A stretch of 38,682 bases of DNA, taken from the NCBI RefSeq assembly GCF_006345805.1, contig NW_021835932.1, positions 1 to 38,682 of the forward strand, given 5' to 3'. Shown piece by piece: positions 2,266 to 34,197 of this stretch (within the stretch, counting starts at the first letter, position 1; every line of letters starts with the position of its first letter). Both the position numbers and the translations under genes were made by a program. The notes below the pieces were generated by a model, which searched no databases, was not told where the DNA came from, and saw only the letters and a program-made list of their open reading frames with translations. Source of the DNA: Octopus sinensis. Taxonomy: Eukaryota.

Positions 2266-2269
2266 GATG

Positions 2270-2690
2270 CCTATTTCTTTATTACCCACAAGGGGCTAAA
2301 CACAGAGGGGACAAACAAGGACAGACATAGGTATTAAGTCGATTACATCGACCCCAGTGCATAACTGGTACTTAATTTATCGACCCCGAAAGGATGAAAG
2401 GCAAAGTCGACCTCGGCGGAATTTGAACTCAGAACGTAACGACAGACGAGATACCTATTTCTTTATTACCCACAGGGGGCTAAACACAGAGGGGACAAAC
2501 AAGGACAGACATAGGTATTAAGTCGATTACATCGACCCCAGTGCATAACTGGTACTTAATTTATCGACCCCGAAAGGATGAAAGGCAAAGTCGACCTCGG
2601 CGGAATTTGAACTCAGAACGTAACGACAGACGAAATACGGCTACGCATTTTGCCCGGCGTGCTAACGATTCTGCCAGCTCGCCACCTTTA
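2270..2690 (-). mobile_element. SINE-B with a tandem 184-bp duplication of its 3' part
   Basis: 2270-2453 and 2454-2637 are near-identical direct repeats. The head (reverse complement of ggcgagctggcagaatc) is at about 2690. Confidence 0.75.
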
Positions 2691-3575: not shown

Positions 3576-3713
3576 AGATTTCAAGGATCAGATGAAAATC
3601 GCCTTAGCAAGCATCAGTGTATCAGTCAAGAGGGCCAGGAGCCAGGTAATCATGATGATGAGGAGGAGGAAGAAGAGGGTATTCATAGCGATGTTGATGA
3701 TGATGGTGGTAGT

Positions 3714-5499
3714 TTAACCCTTTCGTTACCAACCCAGCTGAAACTGGCTCTGGGCTCTGTTGTACAAATGTCTTGTTTTCATAAGTTCTGAATTAAAATC
3801 TTCCACCAAACCTTAGTCACAATTTATGTTCCTAACACCAGCTGAATGGTAACTAAGTTATTTTACAAAATTCTTTGTTATATTTAAAATTAATTAAAAG
3901 AAACTCAGAGCATCTCAACAGAAATATGGTAACAAAAGGGTTAAGAAGAAAAATAATCAGCAGAAAACATGAGAGAAGGAGACCTCAATGTGGTCAATCT
4001 ATATGCTAGAAATAATAGCCTAAATTTCCTTCAATCCACACCCTTTCAACTGCTTCTAATGTCCATCTGCCTAAATGTAGAGGTGTTTTTAACCCTTTCA
4101 ATACCAACTCAGCTGAAACCACCCCTGGCTCTGAGTACAAATGTCTTGTTTTCAGAAGTTTTGAATTAAAATCTTCCACCAAACCTTAGACACAATTTAT
4201 GTTCCTAACACTAGCTGAATGATAACTAAGTATTTACTAAATTCTTTGTTATTTTAAGTAATTGAAAGAAACAGTGAGCATCTCAACAGAAATATGGTAA
4301 CAAAAGGCTTAAGAAGAAAAATAATCAGCAGAAGACATGAGAGGAGACCTCAATGTGGTCACTCTAAATGCTGAATAATAGCCTAAATTTCCTTCAATCC
4401 ACACCCTTTCAACTGCTTCTAATGTCCATCTGCCTAAATGTAGAGGTGTTTTTAACCCTTTCAATACCAACTCAGCTGAAACCACCCCTGCTCTTGAGTA
4501 CAAATGTCTTGTTTTCAGAAGTTTTGAATTAAAATCTTCCACCAACCTTAGACACAATTTATGTTCCTAACACTAGCTGAATGATAACTAAGTTATTTTA
4601 CTAAATTCTTTGTTATATTTAAAGTAATTGAAAGAAACAGTGAGCATCTCAACAGAAATATGGTAACAAAAGGCTTAAGAAGAAAAATAATCAGCAGAAG
4701 ACATGAGAGGAGACCTCAATGTGGTCACTCTAAATGCTGGAAATAATAGCCTAAATTTCCTTCAATCCACACCCTTTCAACTGCTTCTAATGTCCATCTG
4801 CCCAAATGTAGAGATGTTTTTAACCCTTTCAATACCAACCCAGCTGAAACTGCCTCTGGGCACTGTAGTACAAATGTCCTGTTTTCATAAGTTTTAAATT
4901 AAAATCTTCCCCCAAACCTTAGTCACAATTTATATTCCTAACACTGGCTGAATGATAACTAAGTTATTTTACTAAATTCTTTGTTATATTTAAATTAATT
5001 GAAAGAAACACAGAGCATCTCAAAATAAATGCAGTTACGAAAGGGTTAAGAAGAAAAATAATCAGCAGAAAACATGAGAGAAGGAGACCTCAATGTGGTC
5101 ACTCTATATGCTAGAAATAATAGCCTAAATTTCCTTCAATCCACACCCTTCCAACTGCTTCTAATGTCCATCTGCCTATGATAACTAAGTTATTTTACTA
5201 AATTCTTTGTTATATTTAACCCTTTAGCGTTCAGATTATTCCATCAAACATAATGCTTATTGATTCCCATTGATTTGAATTAATCATGCATTATCTCATA
5301 TCTTCAAGATCTTGATGGTGTAATTACTTAATGTAGAATAACATTGTAGGGTAGGTGTGAGAGCCTGGATCTGGTCAGTTTGAACATAAACCAGATTAAC
5401 TATTTTGGCCGGATATGGCCGGTTTAAATACTAAAGGGTTAAAATTAATTGAAAGAAACACAGAGCATCTCAAAATAAATACAGTAACGAAAGGGTTAA
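3714..5499. mobile_element. Tandem array of a TTAA-flanked piggyBac-type MITE (about 220 bp; 4 full copies + 1 partial) alternating with a ~140-bp spacer
   Basis: TTAA|CCCTTT...AAAGG(G/C)|TTAA termini at 3714-3944, 4089-4312, 4452-4678 and 4820-5049; a 3'-half copy ends at TTAA 5496-5499. The spacer gaagaaaaataatcagcag...aatgtagag is repeated four times. TTAA TSDs with CCC/GGG ends are the established piggyBac signature. Confidence 0.8.
5220..5438. mobile_element. Second TTAA MITE family nested in the last MITE copy
   Basis: TIRs ccctttag/ctaaaggg and TTAA TSDs at 5216-5219 and 5439-5442. Removing it restores the host tatat-TTAA-aattaattgaaag. Confidence 0.8.
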
Positions 5500-8746: not shown

Positions 8747-9187
8747 ATGTGTGTGTTTATATATACATAGATTGTATATATCTGTCCCTCTATCTCTACA
8801 TATATATATATTTATGTATGTATGTATGCATTCAAAGATAAGTGTTTCCATTGTATGTCTGCCAGTCTAGACCATGTCAATGAGATAGTAAATGGTTGTC
8901 CCAATTTCTGCTATACAATGCAATAACATAGTGAAAGAGGTCGGGGAGATGTTGTTTTGTGTCTACAGTTTACAGGCTAGGTGTAAGAACTGTTAGGGAA
9001 CTGCTGTGGTGGTGGGGGTCATCGTAGTCGTTGCCGTTTAGTTTTGGGTCAGTACTGATCATGCTGGTATGTAACCAAAGACATTCCAACTGTGACAATT
9101 GCATGTATTGAGTTCCTTTTTCAGACCTTTGGCGATAAGCTGTGCTTGAGAAAACACAGCAAGCTAAGTGAAAGCGTAGTTGTGGCT

Positions 9188-9637
9188 TCAAACTTGAAAT
9201 CTTCAAAACCACAGTCGAACCAATTCTACTATATGGCTCAGAAACCTGGACGTTATCAAAGAAGCTTGAGAGGCGGTTGGATGGAACCTACACTCGCCTC
9301 CTTATGAGAGCTCAAAATATCTCGTGGAAGCATCATCCAACCAAAATGCAAATATATGGGAAACTACCACCTGTGTCATCTCTTGTGAAAGGTAGGAGAG
9401 TCCAGTTTGCTGGACATTGTTGTAGAGCTGAAAAAGAGGTAATTTCTACTCTTCTCCTCTGGAAGCCATCTACTCGCAATACCAGAGGGTGCACACTCTC
9501 CTACCCTGATGTAATTTCCAGGGATACAGGCATCCAGCAACAGGACCTCTGTAATGCTATGATGGACTGTGAAGTCTGGCGTAGCATGGTAAATTCCTTT
9601 GTCTCGACCACAGTCGAACAATGATGATGATGATGAC
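9188..9637 (+). mobile_element. RTE-related LINE 3' end (family RTE-2) inserted into an RTE-1 3' UTR
   Basis: Remnant PILL(Y)GSETWTLS...RRVQFAGHCCRAEKEVIS...DCEVWRS...VEQ*, then a (TGA)n tail. Direct repeat GTGGCT at 9182-9187 and 9638-9643. LYGSETW is typical of RTE-clade RTs; the exact clade (RTE/RTEX/Proto2) is unresolved. Confidence 0.8.
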
Positions 9638-9789
9638 GTGGCTGATGCTTGTGCCACCTGACTGGCACCCATGCTGGTGGCACACAAACAGCAAATATTA
9701 CACTCTTGAAGTGGTTGGCATTAGGAAAGACATAGAAACCGTGCCAAAGACATACATCATCTCGAAAGAGTCCAGAAGCTGGCTACCCG

Positions 9790-10222: not shown

Positions 10223-10439
10223 ATCAAACCGGAACCTCCGGCTTGCCAGTTCCAGTCAAACTGTCTAACCCACGCCAGCATGGAAAGCGGATGTTAAATG
10301 ATGATGATGATGATGGCTGTGTGGTTAAGAAGCTAGCTTTGTTACCATGTTTTAGGTTCAGTACCACTGTGTAGCTCCATGGGCAGGTGTCTTCTACAAT
10401 AGCCCCAGGCTGACCAGTATCTTGAGAATAAATTTGGTA

Positions 10440-11205
10440 GAGCCGCTAAGTAACGGGGACATAAACACACCATCATCAGTTGTCAAGCAATGTTGGAGGG
10501 ACAAACATACACACACACACACATATATATGTATATATATATGGGCCTCTTTCAGTTTCTGTCTACCAAATCCACTCACAAGGCTTTGGTCGGCCTGAGG
10601 CTACAGTGACATTTGCCCAAGGTGTCACGCAGTGGGACTGAACCTGGAACCATGTGGTTGGTAAGCAAGCTACTTACCACACAGCCACTCCTACGCCTAT
10701 TAATTAATTGTGGCTGTGTGGTAAATAGCTTGTTTACCAACCACATGGTTCCGGGTTCAGTCCCACTGCATGGTACCTTGGGCGAGTGTCTTCTACTATA
10801 GCCTCGGGGCCGACCAAAGCCTTGTGAGTGGATTTGGTAGACGGAAACTGAAAGAAGCCTGTCGTATATATATATCTGCGTGTGTGTGTGTTTGTATGTC
10901 TGTGTTTGTCCCCCTAGCATTGCTTGACAACCGATGCTGGTGTCCTGTCACTTAGCGGTTTGGCAAAAGAGACCGATAGAATAAGTACTGGGTTTACAAA
11001 AGAATAAGTCCCGGGGTCGAGTTGCTCGATTAAAGGCGGTGCTCCAGCATGGCCGCAGTCAAATGACTGAAACAAGTAAAAGAGACCAATAGAATAAGTA
11101 CTGGGCTTACAAAGAATAAGTCCCAGGGTCGAGTTGCTCGACTAAACGCGATGCTCCAGCATGGCCGCAGTCAAATGACTGAAACAAGTAAAAAGGGTAA
11201 AGAGT
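10440..11205. mobile_element. Head-to-head inverted SINE-A pair plus a duplicated 3' end
   Basis: Minus copy about 10440-10690 and plus copy about 10710-11095; the 3' block gaccaatagaataag...gaaacaagtaaaa is duplicated to about 11205. Confidence 0.75.
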
Positions 11206-15744: not shown

Positions 15745-16640
15745 TATTATTATTATTATGGATGTCGCATAGGGTACAATATCACGAGGTTGTGGATTGA
15801 AGAAATTGTGTCTACCGGAGGATTTGTACTCTTTGTCAAGTCACAACAAGGACCTCAGACAGACAGTACTTTATGCAATATGCATGCAGTTCCAAGGAAC
15901 ACCGACTTTTGCAAGTAACATCTAGATTGTAGGGTATCTCTAAGGCAGTGCTTTTCAAACTTTTTGCTGGAGCGGAACCCCAAGGAAACATTCCACTGGC
16001 TCGAGGAACCCCTGTGCAATAATTTAATAGTCTTATGCACACATATCTGCACAGGAGAATTAAAAATTACTGTCGATTTTAGCAGTTTTGTAACTTCTTG
16101 CGGAACCCTGGACTGTACTGGCAGAAACCTAAGGTTCTGCGGAACCCTGGTTGAAAACCACTGAGTTAGACACAGTCAGTTAGACACTAGTTAGACCAGT
16201 GCTTTTCAAACTTTTTGCTGGAGCGGAACCCCAAGGAAACATTCCACTGGCTCGAGGAACCCCTGTGCAATAATTTAATAGTCTTATGCACACATATCTG
16301 CACAGGAGAAATAAAAATTACTGCCGATTTTAGCAGTTTTGTAACTTCTTGCGGAACCCTGGACTGTACTGACGGAACTCTAAGGTTCCAAGGAACCCTG
16401 GTTGAAAACCACTGCTCTAAGGTGTTCAGATTTTTTTCCAGATTGGGTGGTATTGAACCCAATGCTCCAATTACAATAGGGATAATCTTTATGTTCAACT
16501 ATCATAGTTGCCACATCTTAGCAATCTCAATTCCAAGGTCCTCATATTTATCAACTTCTCCTCTTTCTCTTATGATGATATGTTGGTGTCCAGGCACTGC
16601 TACGTCGATTATTAAGCACTCTACGTCGATTATTAAGCAT
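15745..16640 (-). mobile_element. R4/Dong-clade 3' end with (TAA)n tail, interrupted by a compound hAT MITE
   Basis: Minus-strand frames give CLIIDVAVPG..., IPIVIGALGSIP, and after the MITE LQKSVFLGTACILHKVLSV*. The (TAA)n tail is at about 15740-15760. Confidence 0.8.
15946..16414. mobile_element. Compound hAT MITE: two ~218-bp copies plus a 33-bp spacer, inside one 8-bp TSD
   Basis: Copies at 15946-16163 and 16197-16414 with TIRs cagtgcttttcaa/ttgaaaaccactg. CTCTAAGG occurs at 15938-15945 and 16415-16422. Confidence 0.85.
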
Positions 16641-18639: not shown

Positions 18640-19125
18640 TTATGGCAGCGAGCTGGTAGATTCATTAACATGCCAGGCAAAATGCTTAGTTCAAATTCCG
18701 CCGAGGTCAACTTTACCTTTCATCCTTCCAGAGGTCGATAAAATAAGTACCAGTTGAATACTGGGGTTGATCTAATCAACTCATCCCTTCCCCCAAGATT
18801 GTTGTCCTTGTGACAAATTTTGAAATCATCATTATTATTATTATTATCAATAATAAGGTGGCACGCTGGTAGAATCGTTAGCACACTAGACAAAGTGCTT
18901 AGCGGTATTTTGCCTATCACTAAGTTCTGAGCTCAAATTCTGCCGAGGTCAACTTTACCTTTCATTCTTTCAGGGTCAATTAATTAAGTACCAGTTATGC
19001 ACTGGGGTTGATGTAATCGACTGTTCCCACCATCACCACCGCCACCACCACTGCTGAAAAATTTCAGGCTTTGTGCTGTAGTAGAAAGGATTATTATTAT
19101 TATTATTATTGAAAGTAGCAAGCTA
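18640..19125 (+). mobile_element. Two SINE-B copies plus the start of a third, split by the LINE array (continues at 23362-23575)
   Basis: gaaagtagcaagcta joined to acagaatcaggagcatgcc...gttctgagttcaattt reconstitutes a degenerate SINE-B head. Confidence 0.7.
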
Positions 19126-19666
19126 TCATCATCATTCATCATTGTTCGACCGTGGTCGAGACAATGGAATTTACCATGCTACGCCAGACTTCACGGTCCA
19201 TCATGGCATTATGGAGGTCCTGTTGCTGGATGCTTGTATCCCTGGAGATTACATCAGGGTAGGAGAGTGTGCACCCTCTGGTATCGCGAGCAGATGGCTT
19301 CCAGAGGAGAAGAGTAGAAATTACCTCGTGTTCAGCTCTACAACAATGTCCAGCAAACTGGACTCTTCTACCTTTCACAAGAGATGATATGTATGTATGT
19401 ATATATATATCATCATCATCATTGTTCGACCGTGGTCGAGACAATGGAATTTACCATACTACGCCAGACTTCACAGTCCATCATGGCATTACGGAGGTCC
19501 TGTTGCTCGATGCCTGTATCCCTGGAGATTACATCAGGGTAGGAGAGTGTGCACCCTCTGGTATCGCAAGTAGATGGCTTCCAGAGGAGAAGAGTAGAAA
19601 TTACCTCTTTTTCAGCTCTACAACAATGTCCAGCAAACTGGACTCTTCTACCTTTCACAAGAGATG

Positions 19667-19698
<32 letters not shown>

Positions 19699-20853
19699 CA
19701 TCATCATCATTGTTCGACTGTGGTCGAGACAATGGTATTTACCATGCTACGCAGACTTCACGGTCCATCATGGCATTACGGAGGTCCTGTTGCTGGATGC
19801 TTGTATCCCTGGAGGTTACATCAGGATAGGAGAGTGTGCACCCTCTGGTATCGCGAGTAGATGGCTTCCAGAGGAAAAGAGCAGAAATTACCTCGTTTTC
19901 AGCTCTACAACAATGTCCAGCAAACTGGACTCTTCTACCTTTCACAAGAGATGATATGTATGTATGTATATATATATATATATATCATCATCATCATTGA
20001 TCGTCCGTGGTCGAGACAATGGAATTTACCATGCTACGCCAGACTTCACGGTCCATCATGGCATTACGGAGGTCCTGTTGCTCGATGCCTGTATCCCTGG
20101 AGATTACATCAGGGTAGGAGAGTGTGCACCCTCTGGTATCGCAAGTAGATGGCTTCCAGAGGAGAAGAGTAGAAATTACCTCTTTTTCAGCTCTACAACA
20201 ATGTCCAGCAAACTGGACTCTTCTACCTTTCACAAGAGATGATATGTGTGTATATATATAGATATATATATATATCATCATCATCATTGTTCGACTGTGG
20301 TCGAGACAATGGTATTTACCATGCTACGCCAGACTTCACGGTCCATCATGGCATTACGGAGGTCCTGTTGCTGGATGCTTGTATCCCTGGAGGTTACATC
20401 AGGATAGGAGAGTGTGCACCCTCTGGTATCGCGAGTAGATGGCTTCCAGAGGAAAAGAGCAGAAATTACCTCGTTTTCAGCTCTACAACAATGTCCAGCA
20501 AACTGGACTCTTCTACCTTTCACAAGAGATGATATGTATGTATGTATATATATATATATAATATATATATATATACATATATATATATATCATCATCATC
20601 ATTGATCGTCTGTGGTCGAGACAATGGAATTTACCATGCTACGCCAGACTTCACGGTCCATCATGGCATTACGGAGGTCCTGTTGCTGGATGCTTGTATC
20701 CCTGGAGATTACATCAGGATAGGAGAGTGTGCGCCCTCTGGTATTGCGAGTAGATGGCTTCCAGAGGAAAAGAGCAGAAATTACCTCGTTTTCAGCTCTA
20801 CAACAATGTCCAGCAAACTGGACTCTTCTACCTTTCACAGAGATGATATTATG

Positions 20854-20910
<57 letters not shown>

Positions 20911-23361
20911 CATCATCATCATTGATCGTCTGTGGTCGAGACAATGGAATTTACCATGCTACGCCAGACTTCACGGTCCATCATGGCATTACAGAGGTCC
21001 TGTTGCTGGATGCTTGTATCCCTGGAGATTACATCAGGATAGGAGAGTGTGCGCCCTCTGGTATCGCGAGTAGATGGCTTCCAGAGGAAAAGAGCAGAAA
21101 TTACCTCATTTTCAGCTCTACAACAATGTCCAGCAAACTGGACTCTCCTACCTTTCACAAGAGATGATATGTATGTATGTATATATATATCATCATCATC
21201 ATCATTGTTCGACAATGGAATTTACCATGCTACGCCAGACTTCACAGTCCATCATGGCATTACGGAGGTCCTGTTGCTGGATGCCTGTATCCCTGGAGAT
21301 TACATCAGGGTAGGAGAGTGTGCACCCTCTGGTATCGCGAGTAGATGGCTTCCAGAGGAAAAGAGCAGAAATTACCTCGTTTTCAGCTCTACAAAAATGT
21401 CCAGCAAACTGGACTCTCCTACCTTTCACAAGAGATGATATGTATGTATATATATATATATCATCATCATCATCATTGTTCGACCATGGTCGAGATAATG
21501 AATTTACCATGCTACGCCAGACTTCACAGTCCATCATGGCATTACAGAGGTCCTGTTGCTGGATGCTTGTATCCCTGGAGATTACATCAGGGTAGGAGAG
21601 TGTGCACCCTCTGGTATCGCGAGTAGATGGCTTCCAGAGGAAAAGAGCAGAAATTACCTTGTTTTCAGCTCTACAACAATGTCCAGCAAACTGGACTCTC
21701 CTACCTTTCACAAGAGATGATATGTATGTATATATATATATATCATCATCATCATCATTGTTCGACCATGGTCGAGATAATGAATTTACCATGCTACGCC
21801 AGACTTCACGGTCCATCATGGCATTACGGAGGTCCTGTTGCTGGATGCCTGTATCCCTGGAGATTACATCAGGGTAGGAGAGTGTGCGCCCTCTGGTATT
21901 GCGAGTAGATGGCTTCCAGAGGAGAAGAGTAGAAATTACCTCTTTTTCAGCTCTACAACAATGTCCAGCAAACTGGACTCTCCTACCTTTCACAAGAGAT
22001 GATATGTATGTATATATATATATATCATCATCATCATCATTGTTCGACCATGGTCGAGATAATGAATTTACCATGCTACGCCAGACTTCACGTCCATCAT
22101 GGCATTACGGAGGTCCTGTTGCGGATGCCTGTATCCCTGGAGATTACATCAGGGTAGGAGAGTGTGCGCCCTCTGGTATTGCGAGTAGATGGCTTCCAGA
22201 GGGAAAGAGTAGAAATTACCTCTTTTTCAGCTCTACAACAATGTCCAGCAAACGGACTCTTCTACCTTTCACAAGAGATGATATGTATGTATATATATAT
22301 ATATATATCTCATCATCATCATTGTTCGATTGTGGTCGAGACAATGGAATTTACCATGCTACACCAGACTTCACGGTCCATCATGGCATTACGGAGGTCC
22401 TGTTGCTGGATACCTGTATCCCTGGAGATTACATCAGGGTAGGAGAGTGTGCGTCCTCTGGTATTGCGAGCAGATGGCTTCCAGAGGAAAAGAGCAGAAA
22501 TTACCTCATTTTCAGCTCTACAACAATGTCCAGCAAACTGGACTCTCCTACCTTTCACAAGAGATGATATGTATGTATATATATATATATATCATCATCA
22601 TCATTGTTCGACCATGGTCAAGATAATGAATTTACCATGCTACGCCAGACTTCACAGTCCATCATGGCATTACAGAGGTCCTGTTGCTGGATGCTTGTAT
22701 CCCTGGAGATTACATCAGGGTAGGAGAGTGTGCACCCTCTGGTATCGCGAGTAGATGGCTTCCAGAGGAAAAGAGCAGAAATTACCTCGTTTTCAGCTCT
22801 ACAACAATGTCCAGCAAACTGGACTCTCCTACCTTTCACAAGAGATGATATGTATGTATATATATATATATCATCATCATCATTGTTCAACCATGGTCGA
22901 GATAATGAATTTACCATGCTACGCCAGACTTCACGGTCCATCATGGCATTACGGAGGTCCTGTTGCTGGATGCCTGTATCCCTGGAGATTACATCAGGGT
23001 AGGAGAGTGTGCGCCCTCTGGTATTGCGAGTAGATGGCTTCCAGAGGAGAAGAGTAGAAATTACCTCTTTTTCAGCTCTACAACAATGTCCAGCAAACTG
23101 GACTCTTCTACCTTTCACAAGAGATGATATGTATGTATGTATATATATATATATATACTTTGATACTTTGATAGGTTTCGGCCATTATTGGCCCAGGCCA
23201 TGTCTAACTTAATAGCACCACCTGGGTGGTGCTATTATATATCATCATCATCATTGTTCGACTGTGGTTGAGACAATGGAATTTACCATGCTATGCCAGA
23301 CTGTTGCTGGATGCTTGTATCCCTGGAAATTACATCAGGGTAGGAGAGTGTGCACCCTCTG
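19126..23361 (-). repeat. Tandem array of RTE-2 LINE 3' ends: 14 full ~255-bp units with (TGA)n tails and (TA)n/(CATA)n spacers, plus 1 shorter unit
   Basis: Every unit encodes SSLVKGRRVQFAGH...VEQ on the minus strand. Full units share the same 5' break (tcatctcttgtga). The period is about 270-320 bp. GCAAGCTA flanks the array at 19118-19125 and 23362-23369. Confidence 0.95.
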
Positions 23362-23579
23362 GCAAGCTAACAGAATCAGGAGCATGCCAAGCAAAACTCT
23401 TAGTGACCTTTCATCCACTGTTATGTTCTGAGTTCAATTTCTGCTGAGGTTGACTTTGCCTTTTATCCTTTCGGGGTCAATAAAAATAAATACCAGTTGA
23501 GTACCGGGATCGATGTAATTGTCTACCCCCCTCCCCCAAAATTTCAGGCCTTGTGCCCATAGTAAAACGGATTATTATT

Positions 23580-24155
23580 AGACCTTTGGAAATATGCTGT
23601 ACGTGAGAAGACCAGGCAGGACAAGTGAGCCCAGCCCACTTATGCATGCCTTTCCTCCCTTGGACACAAAGACCTGTTGAGGCAAGCGAAGTTGATATCG
23701 AACCTCATCCGACGACAGGCACCCATGCCAACCCCCTTTGCTTGCGAAGACATGTTGGCGCAAGTGAAATCGAAATCGAAATTGAACCAATCCTATGACT
23801 GGCACCCGGCAGATGCCAAGACCCCTGGACTGGTGGTATGTAAAAAGCACTATCCAAATCGTGGCTGATGCCAGCGCCGTCTCGACTGGCTTCCGTGCCG
23901 GTGGCACGTAAATTGCACCAATCCGACCGTGGCCGTTGCCAGCCTCGCCTGGCACCTGTGCAGGTGGCACGTAAAAAGCACCCACTACACTCACGGAGTG
24001 GTTGGTGTTAGGAAGGGCATCCAGCTGTAGAAACACTGCCAGATAAGACTGGAGCCTGGTGCAGCCTTCTGGCTTCCCAGATCCCCGGTCGAAACCGTCC
24101 AACCCATGCTAGCATGGGAAACGGACGTTAAACGATGATGATGATGATGATGATT
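23580..24155 (+). mobile_element. RTE-1 3' end with (GAT)n tail
   Basis: gacctttggaaatatgctgtacgtgagaagacc...ggacgttaaacgatgatgatg, matching 533-1160. Confidence 0.8.
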
Positions 24156-25085: not shown

Positions 25086-25385
25086 TGCGAGCATCTGCAC
25101 ATGTGTTGGATGAGCAAAGACCCGCAGACAATTGGTGCAATGCTGCAAGACTTATCCAGCATAATAATACAACAAACATTGGAAAAAAATTTTAAAAGAT
25201 GAAAGAAACCTGGAGGTGGTGATGATGATAATGATGATGATTCTTATTAATATTATTATTATTATTATTATTATTGTTATTGATGTTATTGTTGTTTATT
25301 AATATTGTTGTTATTAATGATATTGTTATTGCTGTTGTTTCTTGTTTTTGGTTGTTTTTTTTTATATGTATGTGTCCCTGCAGAT

Positions 25386-26072
25386 GTGGCTGTGTGGTAA
25401 GAAGTTTGCTTCCCAACCACTTGGTTCCGGGTTCAGTCCCACTGCGTGGCCCCTTGGGCAAGTGTCTTCTACTATAGCCTCGGGCTTACCAAAGCCTTGT
25501 GAGTGGATTTGGTTGACGGAAACTGAAAGAAGCCCGTCGTATATATATATATATATATAGGTGCAGGAGTGGCTGTGTGGTAAGAAGTTTGCTTCCCAAC
25601 CACTTGGTTCCGGGTTCAGTCCCACTGCGTGGCCCCTTGGGCAAGTGTCTTCTGCTATAGCCTCGGGTCAACCAAAGCCTTGTGAGTGGATTTGGTAGAC
25701 GGAAACTGAAAGAAGCCTGTCGTATATATATATAGGTGCAGGAGTGGCTGTGTGGTAAGTAGCTTGCTTACCAACCACATGGTTCCGGGTTCAGTCCCAC
25801 TGCGTGGCCCCTTGGGCAAGTGTCTTCTACTATAGCCTCGGGCCAACCAAAGCCTTGTGAGTGGATTTGGTAGACAGAAACTGAAAGAAGCCTGTCGTGT
25901 GTGTGTGTGTGGCTTCTTTCAGTTTCTGTCTACCAAATTCACTCACAAGGATTTGGTTGGCCCGAGGATATTGTAGAAGACACTTTCCCAAGGTGCCAGG
26001 CAGTGGGACAGAACCCGGAACCATGTGGTTGGAAAACAAGCTTCTTACCACCCAGACACGCCTGCACCTATA
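25386..26072. mobile_element. Three tandem SINE-A heads (+) followed by one inverted head (-)
   Basis: Heads start near 25386, 25563 and 25738; the inverted copy is at 25911-26072. Confidence 0.85.
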
Positions 26073-28784: not shown

Positions 28785-30117
28785 TATTTACCAAAATTAT
28801 ATAAAAATATCTTGACAGGCTAAAGAGTAAATTTATTCAATAAAACCACCATTGGCTTCAACCATGGCCTCCAAACGAAGTCGGAATCTCCTGCAACTCT
28901 TCTGGATGGTCCCCTTGTTTAAAGTTGGTGAATGCTGCCATAATCCCTGCCTTCAGTTCATCTTTAGTGTTACAAGGAGTTTTGTTGGTCTCTCACTCAA
29001 CTGCACCCCACACATAATAATCAAGGGGGTTGCAGTCTGGGAAGTTAGGTGGCCAGATTTTAGGGGGGTGATGTGATCGCAGAAATTGTCTGATAGCCAT
29101 GAATGGGTTCTCCTGCTTGTCTGGCATGGTGCAGAGTCCTGTTGCCAGACATAGGGTCTTCCAGCAGTCACCCTCTTGAACCAGGACAGCACTACTTCCT
29201 CTAAGCACTTGATGTAGGCTTCCGTGTTGAGTTTGAGAAAGGGTATGGCCTGGTCAGCCTGTAATGACATGCATAAGATCTGGTCATCAAATCTAAGTAG
29301 AGACTTCAAACTTGAAATCTTCAAAGCCACAGTTGAACCAATTCTACTATATGGCTCAGAAACCTGGACGTTATCAAAGAAGCTTGAGAGGCGGTTGGAT
29401 GGAACCTACACTCGCCTCCTTATGAGAGCTCAAAATCTCTCGTGGAAGCGTCATCCAACCAAAATGCAAATACATGGGAAACTACCACCTGTGTCATCTC
29501 TTGTGAAAGTAGGAGAGTCCAGTTTGCTGGACATTGTTGTAGAGCTGAAAAAGAGGTAATTTCTACTCTTCTCCTCTGGAAGCCATCTACTTGCAATACC
29601 AGAGGGCACACACTCTCCTACCCGGATGTAATCTCCAGGGATACAGGCATCCAGCAACAGGACCTCTGTAATGCCATGATGGACCATGAAGTCTGGCGTA
29701 GCATGGTAAATTCCATTGTCTTGACCACGGTCAAACAATGATGATGATGATTGAGATTGTGTGGGAAGATGAATGGAGACATAACGTTGCCATCACTAGT
29801 GATCACTCCAAATACCATGGTGTTGACTGGATGTTTGATTTTTATCACTCTCGGTACATCTCAGATTGCGCTGTCCTGAGATTGACACCCAAACATTCTG
29901 AAATGTTCGTATTGAAGCTTGCAGCATGAACACCAAGCAGCACAGCATGCCGTTTCCAAATTTCTAGCTGAGTGAATCACATCATGGTGCTGTTTATCTC
30001 ACAGACAGTGCCCAACTGACCCTACTACACTGTGTATTTGACAAAGTCAGAAGCAAACAATGCCTATGCTTGAAATTAAAAATATAAAATGGTAACGATT
30101 TACCCATCGCCACCCTG
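28785..30117 (-). mobile_element. Decayed Tc1/mariner-superfamily (maT/DD37D-like) transposon
   Basis: KHPVNTMVFGVITSDG..PFIFPHNL|KLNTEAYIKCLEEVV...WQQDSAPC...WPPNFPDCNPLDYYVWG, with frameshifts. Terminal TA|cagggtg at 30119-30111. The subfamily assignment is by motif recall only. Confidence 0.8.
29238..29750 (+). mobile_element. RTE-2 LINE 3' end inserted in the transposase gene
   Basis: KLEIFKATVEPILLYGSETWTLSKKLE...; 5-bp TSD TTGAG at 29233-29237 and 29751-29755. Removing it restores the PHNLKLN reading frame. Confidence 0.85.
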
Positions 30118-30809: not shown

Positions 30810-31338
30810 TATATAAATCCTTAAAAATGTTTTAGCCCAAAGGCCACGGCCATGCTGGGGCACCACCGCTCACAAATTCATGTGTGCATATATACACTTA
30901 CATACATACATACATAAAGATCTATGAGTGTGTCTGAATAAATACACACACACATAGTGTTTGTGCATGTGTGTGTCTGAGATAGACAGAGAAAGAGATA
31001 TATATAGAGGAGAGACAGACAGACAGAGACTGGATGAGAATAATTTTTGAGGAAAGTGAAAAAGAAAATTTAATAGTGTTTAAAATAAGGTCATTATGAC
31101 AACGTTAATAATAAAATTAATTAATCACCTTGTGTTAATTTTTTTTCATTAATAAAATTGATTTATTTTATTTTAACGAGTAATAATTAAAATGGAAGTG
31201 TTTGAGTTGAGGATGGCCTGCTATGGGTCAGAAGAGCATCAAGTAATATGTCTTGTGACATTTGTTCTGCCACAGGTTACCTTGGAGTACATAACTGCAA
31301 CTACCAGGAAAGAAACATGAGGTAATGCAGTCCCAGAT

Positions 31339-31572
31339 ACACTGTGTCAGAATAAAAGATAGGATGATCACAGTTGGATTGTCTTTGATTGTAGGTCTGC
31401 TAGATGAAGGTTGCCCGGGGCTAAACAACAACATGGGTGGAACATTAAATGATGTAGTCCTAGGTACACTGTGTCAGAATAAAAGATAGGATGATCATAG
31501 TTGGATTGTCTTTGATTGTAGGTCTGCTAGATGAAGGTTGCCCAGGGCTAAACAACAATATGGACGGAACAT
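31339..31572. repeat. Tandem duplication of about 120 bp
   Basis: tacactgtgtcagaataaaagatagg...ggaacatta(a/g)atgatgta is present twice. Confidence 0.8.
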
Positions 31573-32357
31573 TAGATGATGTATATATAAATATACGACG
31601 GGCTTCTTTCAGTTTCCATCTACCAAATCCACTCCCAAGGCTTTGGTCGGCCCGAGGCTATAGTAGAAGGCACCTGTCCAAGGTGCCACGCAGTGGGACT
31701 GAACCCGGGCCATGTAGTAAGCAAGCTATTTACCACACAGCCGCTCCTACACCTATTATATACATATACATATTTTTCATTATTATTGAGCAACGTTTGG
31801 TAAGTGTCAATATACGAAACTTTCGGACCTTGAATCACTCAATAATCTCTACTGATTTAATAATTAATTCTTTTATTGGTTACAAGGGCTGACAAATATG
31901 ACTGGAAAACATAAAGGGACAAAACAGGCCGAAAGGTTACAAAAGGTTTTGTCCGTTTTTCGAAAGAAAAAGGTCCGTGTAAACAAAGTTTTAAAACAAC
32001 GAAAGAAATTCTACATAATAAGATATGTACAGGCATACTTCAATTTATGTTGGCAATTAGTTACTTATTCTATAAGTCTCTTCTGCCGAACCGCTAAGTT
32101 ACGGGGGTAAAGACAAAGCAACACCAGTAGTCAAGTGGCAGAGTGGGGACAGACGCCCTCCCCCCGCCACACACATAATGGGCTTCCACACAGTTTCGTC
32201 TATGAAATTTACTCACTGGGCTTCAGTCGGTCTGGAACTATAGTAGGTGGCACCTACCCAAGGTGTTAATAATAATAATAATAAACATTGTGTACAGTGC
32301 TCAGGTGCACTACAAAACATTCGACGTAATTCGGAAAACTACATTAAAAGAAAATTT

Positions 32358-33804: not shown

Positions 33805-34197
33805 TCTTTATATATAAAAGTGAAGTTGTGTGTCTGTCTCCTCCGATTTAGATTCCTAACTACTCCCACATTTTGCGGTGCAGTGTAACCAAAACCGGGT
33901 TCTTATAGTCGTGATTCATATCGAGCCCTTCTGGGTATTAGCGCGCGTCTACGATGAGTCTACGATTTTAAAAATAATTTACCATCATTTTTTCCATTTT
34001 AATGCATTTTTTCGCTATTATATAAGGGAAGTAACTCTCTAAAAATGTCTACGATGAGTCAACGATTTAAAAAAAATTTACCATCATTTGTTTTCCATTT
34101 TAATGCATTTTTTTTTGCTATTTTTTGGCTATAACTCTCTAAAAATGCTTATATAGTTATTTCCTTACAAACCCGAGCAACGCCGGGCGTACTGCTA

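What the first reader, a model, noticed from the sequence alone, without database searches (positions are those of the whole stretch)
19118..23369. A 4.2-kb multimer of 15 LINE 3' ends sits inside one 8-bp target-site duplication
Seen in sequence: GCAAGCTA precedes the first tail (19118-19125) and follows the last, 5'-truncated unit (23362-23369). Deleting the array plus one copy rebuilds a SINE-B head (gaaagtagcaagcta|acagaatc). Polarity is that of a single retrotransposition event on the minus strand, with the tail at one TSD and the 5' truncation at the other. The 5'-most unit is shorter than the other 14, so they cannot derive from it alone. Inference: either a multimeric or chimeric RNA (LINE tail, 80-bp unique segment, microsatellite, LINE tail...) was retroposed as one piece, or a two-unit chimera inserted and then expanded in place. 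Either way this looks like a satellite built from LINE 3' recognition ends that could itself be mobilised.
Basis: partly seen in the sequence, partly recalled or inferred. Interest (0 to 1): 0.8.

Follow-up and report, generated by a model that had tools for sequence, protein, structure and literature searches.

The report
LINE-tail tandem array within one insertion
A jumping gene's tail end landed once inside another repeat as a two-copy founder and was then copied in place into a 15-unit, 4.2-kb tandem array, a clear but not new example of how satellite DNA arises from mobile elements.

Summary
Window 19118-23369 holds 14 full units and one shorter unit, each the last ~260 bp of an APE-type, RTE-like LINE on the minus strand. 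Each unit carries the ORF C-terminus, whose TGA stop starts the (TGA)n tail. Units are joined by (AT)n(ACAT)n spacers, and the whole array is framed by an exact 8-bp duplication, GCAAGCTA. Joining the flanks restores a SINE head colinear with five other SINE copies.

The LINE identity, the minus-strand TPRT polarity and the argument that the units cannot all derive from the truncated unit U15 all hold.
- All 14 tail-to-internal junctions are the same junction by descent.
- Two-unit blocks are 99.3% identical, against 97.7-98% for other comparisons.
- Two unit subtypes are interleaved.
- The unique 86-bp segment and the odd compound tail sit only at the two array edges.
- Units decay neutrally, and 6 of 15 have lost the conserved 3' hairpin.

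Nothing supports mobility of the multimer. The junction occurs nowhere else in the window or in JGI metagenome contigs, and the host genome could not be searched. This is a new member of a known kind, of moderate interest.

The parts
19118..19125 (.). Target-site duplication copy 1 (GCAAGCTA). It abuts the tail of U1.
   Evidence: Exact match to 23362-23369. The SINE consensus has this sequence only once.
19125..23154 (-). Fourteen full units, U1-U14. In LINE sense each reads (AT)n(ACAT)n spacer, then ~260 bp of LINE ORF C-terminus, then a (TGA)n tail.
   Evidence: TRF finds a 282-bp period x14. The open frame ends ..STTVEQ*. Each unit scores E=1e-115 to 1e-130 in blastn against the core.
19126..19142 (-). 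Terminal tail of U1, compound and unique: CAATGATGA-ATGATGATGAT. Internal tails are regular, of 14-17 nt.
   Evidence: Alignment of units.
19140..19167 (-). Example, in U1, of the LINE 3' stem-loop (CAUUGU-C-UCGAC-CACG-GUCGA-ACAAUG) that sits directly before the tail.
   Evidence: Fold. The inner 5-bp stem is kept in all 11 LINE ends compared, including relatives at about 70% amino-acid identity. It is broken or deleted in U4, U6, U7, U8, U12 and U15.
23155..23240 (-). Unique 86-bp segment S in the 5'-most spacer, flanked by ATATA and TATATAT. It contains a perfect 13-bp palindrome (23210-23237) and an 8-bp tandem duplication.
   Evidence: No other copy in the window. Inverted repeat I5. No hit in JGI metagenome contigs.
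23241..23361 (-). U15, the 5'-most unit. It is truncated at CAGAGGG.., has a 31-bp internal deletion and a regular 14-nt tail.
   Evidence: Alignments. blastn q108-260.
23362..23369 (.). Target-site duplication copy 2 (GCAAGCTA). It abuts the 5' truncation of U15.
23370..23580 (+). Body and (ATT)n tail of the interrupted SINE. Its head is at 19111-19125.
   Evidence: The empty-site reconstruction aligns colinearly with five SINE copies.
9189..9636 (+). Dispersed copy C1 of the same LINE, 5'-truncated at a different point. TSD GTGGCT at 9183-9188 and 9638-9643.
29239..29751 (+). Dispersed copy C2 of the same LINE, 5'-truncated at a third point. TSD of about 6 bp, TTGAGA, at 29233-29238 and 29751-29756.
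   Evidence: The LINE 5' limit was judged against L001/L002 and P0003/P0009.

Best explanation
One target-primed reverse transcription event by an RTE-like LINE inserted a two-unit founder into the head of a SINE. The nick was on the window + strand at GCAAGCTA^ACAG, and the event made the 8-bp TSD. In LINE sense the founder read: a 5'-truncated LINE end (U15) with tail, a short AT-rich junction that either included S or gained it later, then a second LINE end starting at ..TCATCTCTTGTG with its own tail.

I infer that the founder was most probably copied from a chimeric template. That template would be either a read-through RNA spanning two neighbouring LINE fragments or the product of a template jump of the reverse transcriptase onto the 3' end of a second LINE RNA.

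The two homologous ends then served as substrate for unequal sister-chromatid or homologue exchange. This amplified the full unit plus its junction microsatellite to 14 copies, with later multi-unit block duplications. The units now drift neutrally.

Shown: the anatomy, the TSD, the common descent of all junctions, the block duplications and the neutral decay. Inferred: how the founder dimer arose and the order of events.
For: - Single TSD and a colinear empty site.
- The tail abuts one TSD and the truncation abuts the other.
- All 13 internal unit-unit junctions have the same breakpoint and the same (AT)n(ACAT)n motif, whereas the dispersed copies C1 and C2 read on into LINE sequence at that point (..CCACCTGTGTCATC..). 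The junction therefore arose once.
- U2U3 versus U4U5 and U9U10 versus U13U14 are 99.3% identical including spacers. Other neighbour comparisons give 97.7-98%.
- Two unit subtypes are interleaved: the ancestral CTACTCTTCTCC, also found in C1, C2, L001 and L002, and the array-only CTGCTCTTTTCC.
- The two array edges are unique, as expected because edge repeats escape homogenisation. S occurs only next to U15, and the compound tail only on U1. Internal tails match U15's 14-nt tail.
- Decay is neutral: 29 nonsynonymous against 9 synonymous variants, and the otherwise invariant 3' hairpin is broken in 6 of 15 units.
- The nick site resembles those of C1 and C2 (..A^AC..).
- Tail-to-internal non-LTR dimers that expand by unequal exchange are documented (PMC5932611).
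- Tandem TPRT products made by template jumping are documented for R2 (PMC11371274).
Against: - A first exchange between U15 and the 3' part of the full unit would copy S into every spacer. So either S was deleted once (it is flanked by AT repeats) or it is a later filler insertion. That is one extra step either way.
- No source locus, empty allele or read data could be examined.
- Unit heterogeneity and block structure could have been inherited from a source array if a multimer was retroposed.
- The nick-site similarity rests on three sites only.
Confidence: 0.6

Rival explanations
1. A long multimeric RNA transcribed from a pre-existing array elsewhere was reverse-transcribed in one piece, primed on the last unit's tail and 5'-truncated inside a unit. 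On this reading the array is a mobilisable LINE-tail satellite.
For: - One TSD with correct TPRT polarity.
- U1, the unit that would prime, keeps an intact 3' hairpin and tail.
- The unit heterogeneity could predate insertion.
Against: - The junction is found at no other place in the window or in JGI metagenome contigs.
- The single S-bearing spacer lies exactly at the 5' edge and the single odd tail at the 3' edge. That is expected for in-place growth from a founder and would be a coincidence for a random slice of an array.
- It needs a 4.2-kb cDNA from an element whose other copies here are only ~450-510 bp.
Confidence: 0.12
2. The founder dimer arose by two separate insertions. A first 5'-truncated copy (U15) inserted and made the TSD. 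A second copy then inserted into its (TGA)n tail, so its own TSD is hidden in the tail. In-place amplification followed.
For: - The compound terminal tail CAATGATGA-ATGATGATGAT could be a second tail followed by the rest of the first.
- Non-LTR tail-to-internal tandems are mostly ascribed to repeated insertion (PMC5932611).
- SINEs in this window sit head-to-tail at each other's tails.
Against: - There is no copy of GCAAGCTA at any internal junction, so this is not double insertion at the same target.
- The antisense strand of the tail holds no ..A^AC.. nick motif like those of the three outer junctions.
- Two hits within a 14-nt tail are unlikely a priori unless the element targets tails, and C1 and C2 show no such targeting.
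Confidence: 0.15
3. Each of the 14 units is an independent retrotransposition into the microsatellite or tail of the previous one.
For: The tails and (AT)n tracts could act as hot spots. Tandem SINEs with (TA)n spacers exist at 25379-25898.
Against: - All 14 units have the identical 5' breakpoint and the same junction motif, while C1, C2 and U15 are truncated at three other points.
- Multi-unit blocks are near-identical.
- Array-specific linked variants are shared by subsets of units.
- Units with a broken hairpin recur by descent (U4, U6, U7).
Confidence: 0.03
4. Assembly artefact: the copy number or the linkage of the flanks is wrong.
For: Tandem arrays of 280-bp units are hard to assemble, and no reads are available here.
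Against: The units are individually distinguishable, differing by 1-27 positions and in spacer length (18-59 bp), in an ordered pattern. The two flanks fit together into one SINE.
Confidence: 0.05

Closest known systems
Tail-to-internal tandem dimers of non-LTR retrotransposons that expand into arrays by unequal exchange (McGurk & Barbash 2018, PMC5932611; for example the Drosophila R1 array)
   Same: An intact 3' end is joined to a 5'-truncated copy. One founding junction is propagated to all units. There is later multi-unit turnover and internal deletions.
   Different: There is no target-site copy at the internal junction, so this is not double insertion at the same target. The whole array lies inside one TSD. 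The spacer is a microsatellite. The array is small (4.2 kb).
Satellites derived from LINE 3' ends: chicken HinfI/SCR1 from the CR1 3' UTR plus partial ORF2, the cetacean common satellite from the L1 3' end, and 18HT from HeT-A (review PMC9659126)
   Same: The monomer is the 3' terminal part of a LINE and includes the end of ORF2.
   Different: Those are large, old arrays whose birthplace is lost. Here the insertion site, the TSD and the truncated founder unit are still readable.
Tandem or chimeric TPRT products made by template jumping (R2 proteins in vitro and in cells, PMC11371274), and U6-L1-type chimeric retrocopies (the latter from my own knowledge)
   Same: One insertion event can carry a 3' end followed by a second, full or truncated, template copy, head to tail within one target site.
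   Different: Not shown for RTE-type elements. Here at most the founding dimer, not the 14 units, can be ascribed to it.
RTE-clade LINEs of octopus, whose ORF runs into a microsatellite that makes up most of the 3' UTR (Petrosino et al. 2022, PMC9115989)
   Same: The ORF stop codon starts the (TGA)n tail. Relatives are single ~1000-aa APE+RT ORFs on contigs of about 3.3-3.7 kb.
   Different: Identity with the published octopus elements and phylogenetic placement in the RTE clade were not tested.

Membership tests
Single TPRT insertion of a LINE-derived cDNA | Direct target-site duplication flanking the insert, with a colinear empty site | tested here: met
   GCAAGCTA is present twice. Background 8-mer identity is 4.2e-4. 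The joined flanks align without an indel to five SINE copies.
Single TPRT insertion of a LINE-derived cDNA | The 3' tail abuts one TSD and a 5' truncation abuts the other | tested here: met
   The tail of U1 lies at 19126-19142 next to the TSD. U15 is cut at CAGAGGG next to the other TSD.
Single TPRT insertion of a LINE-derived cDNA | Nick site like that of other copies of the family | tested here: inconclusive
   Bottom-strand sites are GCTA^ACAG (array), CCAC^AACT (C1) and TCAA^ACTC (C2). All three share ^(A)AC, but there are only three sites.
RTE-clade LINE | Single ORF of about 1000 aa with an APE endonuclease and a reverse transcriptase, and no RNase H | tested here: met
   Relatives P0134, P0185, P0196, P0206 and P0250 have Exo_endo_phos plus RVT_1 only, and the region matching the query sits at their extreme C-terminus. 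This was shown for relatives, not for a full copy from this genome.
RTE-clade LINE | Very short 3' UTR that ends in short tandem repeats rather than poly(A) | tested here: met
   The stop codon TGA begins the (TGA)n tail in the array units, in C1 and C2, and in L001-L008.
RTE-clade LINE | Phylogenetic placement of the RT domain within RTE reference elements | not tested
   No reference LINE set was on hand. The sources give no names for the hits.
TE dimer expanded by unequal exchange (McGurk & Barbash model) | All tandem junctions are identical by descent | tested here: met
   The same breakpoint and the same (AT)n(ACAT)n motif occur in all 13 internal unit-unit junctions.
TE dimer expanded by unequal exchange (McGurk & Barbash model) | [quoted passage not shown] | tested here: not met
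   GCAAGCTA/TAGCTTGC is absent from 19126-23361.
TE dimer expanded by unequal exchange (McGurk & Barbash model) | Signs of unequal exchange: multi-unit blocks and mosaic units | tested here: met
   U2U3=U4U5 and U9U10=U13U14 at 99.3% identity, with interleaved subtypes.
Mobile multimer (retroposed LINE-tail satellite) | The same multimer junction at other loci with different TSDs | tested here: not met
   None was found in the remaining 34 kb of the window or in JGI metagenome contigs. The host genome is not in any searchable collection, so this test is weak.
Mobile multimer (retroposed LINE-tail satellite) | Units keep the 3' recognition structure under selection | tested here: not met
   The inner stem is invariant in 11 of 11 dispersed or related LINE ends, but broken or deleted in 6 of 15 units.

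The most novel reading that the evidence does not exclude
The array, or its source, is a composite non-autonomous retroelement: a multimer of LINE 3' recognition ends that is transcribed from the minus strand and retroposed as a block by the RTE-like LINE. Satellite DNA could then spread to new loci by TPRT.
Probability: 0.1. Interest if true: 0.65.

Novelty: new member of a known kind. Interest (0 to 1): 0.35.

Why it matters
Satellites derived from LINE 3' ends are known, but their birth is almost never visible. This locus still shows the target site, the TSD, the truncated founder unit, the founding junction and the later block duplications. That makes it a compact worked example of how a LINE insertion becomes a tandem array in a very repeat-rich genome, probably a cephalopod's. 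That origin is my recollection of the SINE sequences and was not tested. If other loci with the same multimer junction were found, it would additionally show satellite dispersal by LINE machinery, which would be much more interesting.

Tried and rejected
- **Junction in JGI metagenome contigs:** I searched for the multimer junction (CATATCATCTCTTGTGAAAGG) and got 0 hits. A 22-mer from segment S also gave 0 hits.
- **Exact look-up of an array ORF:** The 290-aa ORF spanning the array is not in the gene-position index. Only two close LINE relatives (87-90% identity) exist in the protein collection, both on ~600-bp metagenome contigs. The host genome is therefore not represented, and I ran no further search on a junction peptide.
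- **Names for relatives:** The sources gave none that help, so the clade assignment rests on architecture and tail type only.
- **Rfam:** No match anywhere in the window. Neither S nor the SINEs are known RNA families at gathering score.
- **Hairpin stability:** The fold of the last 64 nt is not more stable than shuffled sequence (z = -0.12). The case for the hairpin rests on conservation, not on energy.
- **Reversed polarity:** I considered a + strand retroposon with a (TATG)n(TA)n tail. I rejected it because the + strand 3' end of the array is the truncated U15, with no tail at the TSD.
- **Rolling-circle or eccDNA reintegration:** I considered and rejected this. It does not predict a tail exactly at the TSD, an 8-bp TSD or a LINE-like nick site.
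- **Selection on the repeated ORF:** I considered and rejected this. There are 29 nonsynonymous against 9 synonymous variants.
Full report
**Observation**

- On the + strand there are fifteen (ATC)n runs.
- TRF reports a 282-bp period with 14.0 copies over 19128-23154.
- I cut the array at the tails and read it on the minus strand. This gives 14 units, each with a ~260-bp core preceded by an (AT)n(ACAT)n spacer of 18-59 bp.
- A fifteenth unit, U15 (23241-23361), begins 107 bp further into the core and also lacks 31 internal bases.
- Between U14 and U15 lies a unique 86-bp segment, S (23155-23240). It has no other copy in the window.
- GCAAGCTA is exact at 19118-19125 and at 23362-23369.
- Random 8-mer pairs in this repeat-rich window match at 4.2e-4, so a flanking match at the two independently defined borders is unlikely by chance.
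- More decisively, the two flanks joined with one GCAAGCTA align without an indel to five other copies of the same SINE. Their consensus reads ..AAGGTGGCAAGCTGGCAGAATC...

The target-site duplication and the empty-site reconstruction are therefore real.

**What the unit is**

The minus-strand core has one frame open over its whole length: SSLVKGRRVQFAGHCCRAENEV...DLRNAMMDREVWRSMVNSIVSTTVEQ. The TGA stop codon is the first repeat of the (TGA)n tail.

Two further copies of the same sequence lie on the + strand.
- C1 (9189-9636) and C2 (29239-29751) both continue upstream into more LINE coding sequence. They are truncated at two other points and have their own short TSDs, GTGGCT and TTGAGA.
- The 5' border of the array unit is therefore not an end of the LINE. 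It is a breakpoint.

A 164-aa C-terminal query found 308 homologues.
- The closest (87-90% identity) sit on small metagenome contigs that also end ..STTVEQ* followed by (TGA)n.
- More distant relatives are 980-1020-aa proteins with only an Exo_endo_phos (APE) domain and an RVT_1 domain. The region homologous to the unit lies at their very C-terminus. Many sit on contigs of 3.3-3.7 kb.
- A single ~1000-aa APE+RT ORF, a tiny 3' UTR and a microsatellite tail are the architecture of RTE-type LINEs. Petrosino et al. describe an octopus RTE whose ORF runs into a microsatellite that makes up most of the 3' UTR (PMC9115989).
- I did not test phylogenetic placement, so I call the element RTE-like.

**3' recognition end**

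Directly before the tail lies a stem-loop, CAUUGU-C-UCGAC-NNNN-GUCGA-ACAAUG.
- It is not more stable than shuffled sequence (z = -0.12).
- However, its inner 5-bp stem is kept in all 11 LINE ends compared, including relatives that share only about 70% of amino acids. The Ser and Val codons there are always TCG and GTC, while the loop varies.
- That pattern fits a 3' RNA element read by the reverse transcriptase, as in other LINEs with microsatellite tails. That last comparison is my own knowledge and was not tested here.
- In the array, the stem is broken or deleted in six of 15 units: U4, U6, U7, U8, U12 and U15.

**How the array grew**

- All 13 internal unit-unit junctions share the same breakpoint and the same (AT)n(ACAT)n motif, so the junction arose once.
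- Pairwise differences between cores range from 1 to 27, but U3/U5, U9/U13, U10/U14 and U2/U4 differ by only 1-4.
- Including spacers, U2U3 versus U4U5 and U9U10 versus U13U14 are 99.3% identical. Other neighbour comparisons give 97.7-98%. These are two-unit blocks duplicated at distances of two and four units.
- Two unit subtypes are interleaved. One keeps CTACTCTTCTCC, as do C1, C2, L001 and L002. The other has the array-only CTGCTCTTTTCC.
- Variants are 29 nonsynonymous to 9 synonymous, with no bias toward third codon positions.

Together with the hairpin losses, this is the signature of DNA-level turnover by unequal exchange and neutral decay. It is not the signature of repeated retrotransposition.

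**The founder**

U15 abuts the TSD and is shorter than the other units, so the insert must from the start have held sequence that U15 lacks. That means at least U15 plus one full unit.

The two edges of the array are unique.
- S occurs only in the spacer next to U15.
- Only U1, next to the other TSD, has a compound tail (CAATGATGA-ATGATGATGAT).
- The internal tails are regular, and most equal U15's 14-nt tail.

This is expected if the interior descends from the single founder junction and the edges escaped homogenisation. It would be a coincidence if a random slice of a longer array had been retroposed.

S is flanked by ATATA and TATATAT. It contains a perfect 13-bp palindrome and an 8-bp tandem duplication.
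- It may be original junction filler that was later deleted once in the interior.
- It may instead be a repair-type insertion into the AT tract.
- I cannot tell which.

**How the founder dimer arose is inferred, not shown**

- The outer junctions look like one TPRT event. There is one TSD, the tail lies at the nick, and the nick site GCTA^ACAG resembles those of C1 (CCAC^AACT) and C2 (TCAA^ACTC).
- No copy of the target lies at any internal junction. Classical double insertion at the same target (PMC5932611) is therefore not met.
- I favour a single event on a chimeric template. That would be either a read-through RNA across two neighbouring LINE fragments or a template jump onto a second LINE RNA. 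Such a jump is documented for R2 proteins, which give head-to-tail tandem insertions (PMC11371274).
- A second insertion into the first copy's tail remains possible.

**Mobility**

- The junction occurs nowhere else in the window or in JGI metagenome contigs.
- S is also absent from those contigs.
- An array ORF is not in the gene-position index.
- The host genome is evidently not in the searchable collections, since only two close LINE relatives were found in 5.8 billion proteins.
- The idea that the multimer itself is retroposed is therefore unsupported and essentially untested. I give it about 10%.

**Comparison with what is known, and verdict**

Satellites derived from LINE 3' ends are known: chicken HinfI/SCR1 from CR1, the cetacean common satellite from L1, and 18HT from HeT-A (PMC9659126). 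So are tail-to-internal non-LTR dimers that expand by unequal exchange (PMC5932611). This locus is a small, young and unusually legible member of that kind, sitting inside one intact TSD. Novelty: a new member of a known kind. Interest is moderate (0.35).

Noticed in passing
window 25379-25990: Three tandem copies of a different SINE-like unit (~175 bp) are separated by (TA)n tracts. An inverted partial copy of the same unit follows across a (TG)n tract. This is a second TE-plus-microsatellite tandem array in the window.
   Followed up: partly
window 3713-5178: A 368-bp unit is repeated four times (92% matches) with no microsatellite between units. Its origin was not examined.
   Followed up: no
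window ~18650-23580: Three SINE copies lie head to tail, each starting directly after the (ATT)n tail of the previous one. The third is the copy interrupted by the LINE array. This suggests tail-targeted SINE insertion in this genome.
   Followed up: partly
window 21202-22074 (-): A 1-bp deletion shared by U9-U11, U13 and U14 shifts the frame. Translation then runs through the tail (as Asp repeats) and the spacer into the next unit, giving a 290-aa repeated ORF. There is no sign of selection (29 nonsynonymous to 9 synonymous variants).
   Followed up: yes
LINE 3' ends: window 9595-9625 and 29713-29743; L001-L008: A stem-loop UCGAC-NNNN-GUCGA directly before the (UGA)n tail is invariant across relatives that share only ~70% of amino acids, with fixed TCG and GTC codons. 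It is a candidate 3' recognition element of this LINE family.
   Followed up: partly
window 10230-10315; 2867-2927; 24131-24154: Other repeat copies also end in (TGA)n/(GAT)n tracts, for example ..GGAAAGCGGATGTTAAA(TGA)n at 10280-10315. These may be non-autonomous elements that use the same LINE's tail.
   Followed up: no
window 2266-2638, 10965-11193, 15946-16414, 31325-31583, 33947-34147: Five further two-copy tandem duplications with periods of 100-251 bp. Short tandem duplication of repeat-derived DNA seems common in this region.
   Followed up: no
L001 565-597: The metagenome contig that carries the closest LINE relative ends in what looks like a Nextera adapter sequence (CTGTCTCTTATACACATCT...). 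The contig end is therefore an artefact of library preparation.
   Followed up: no
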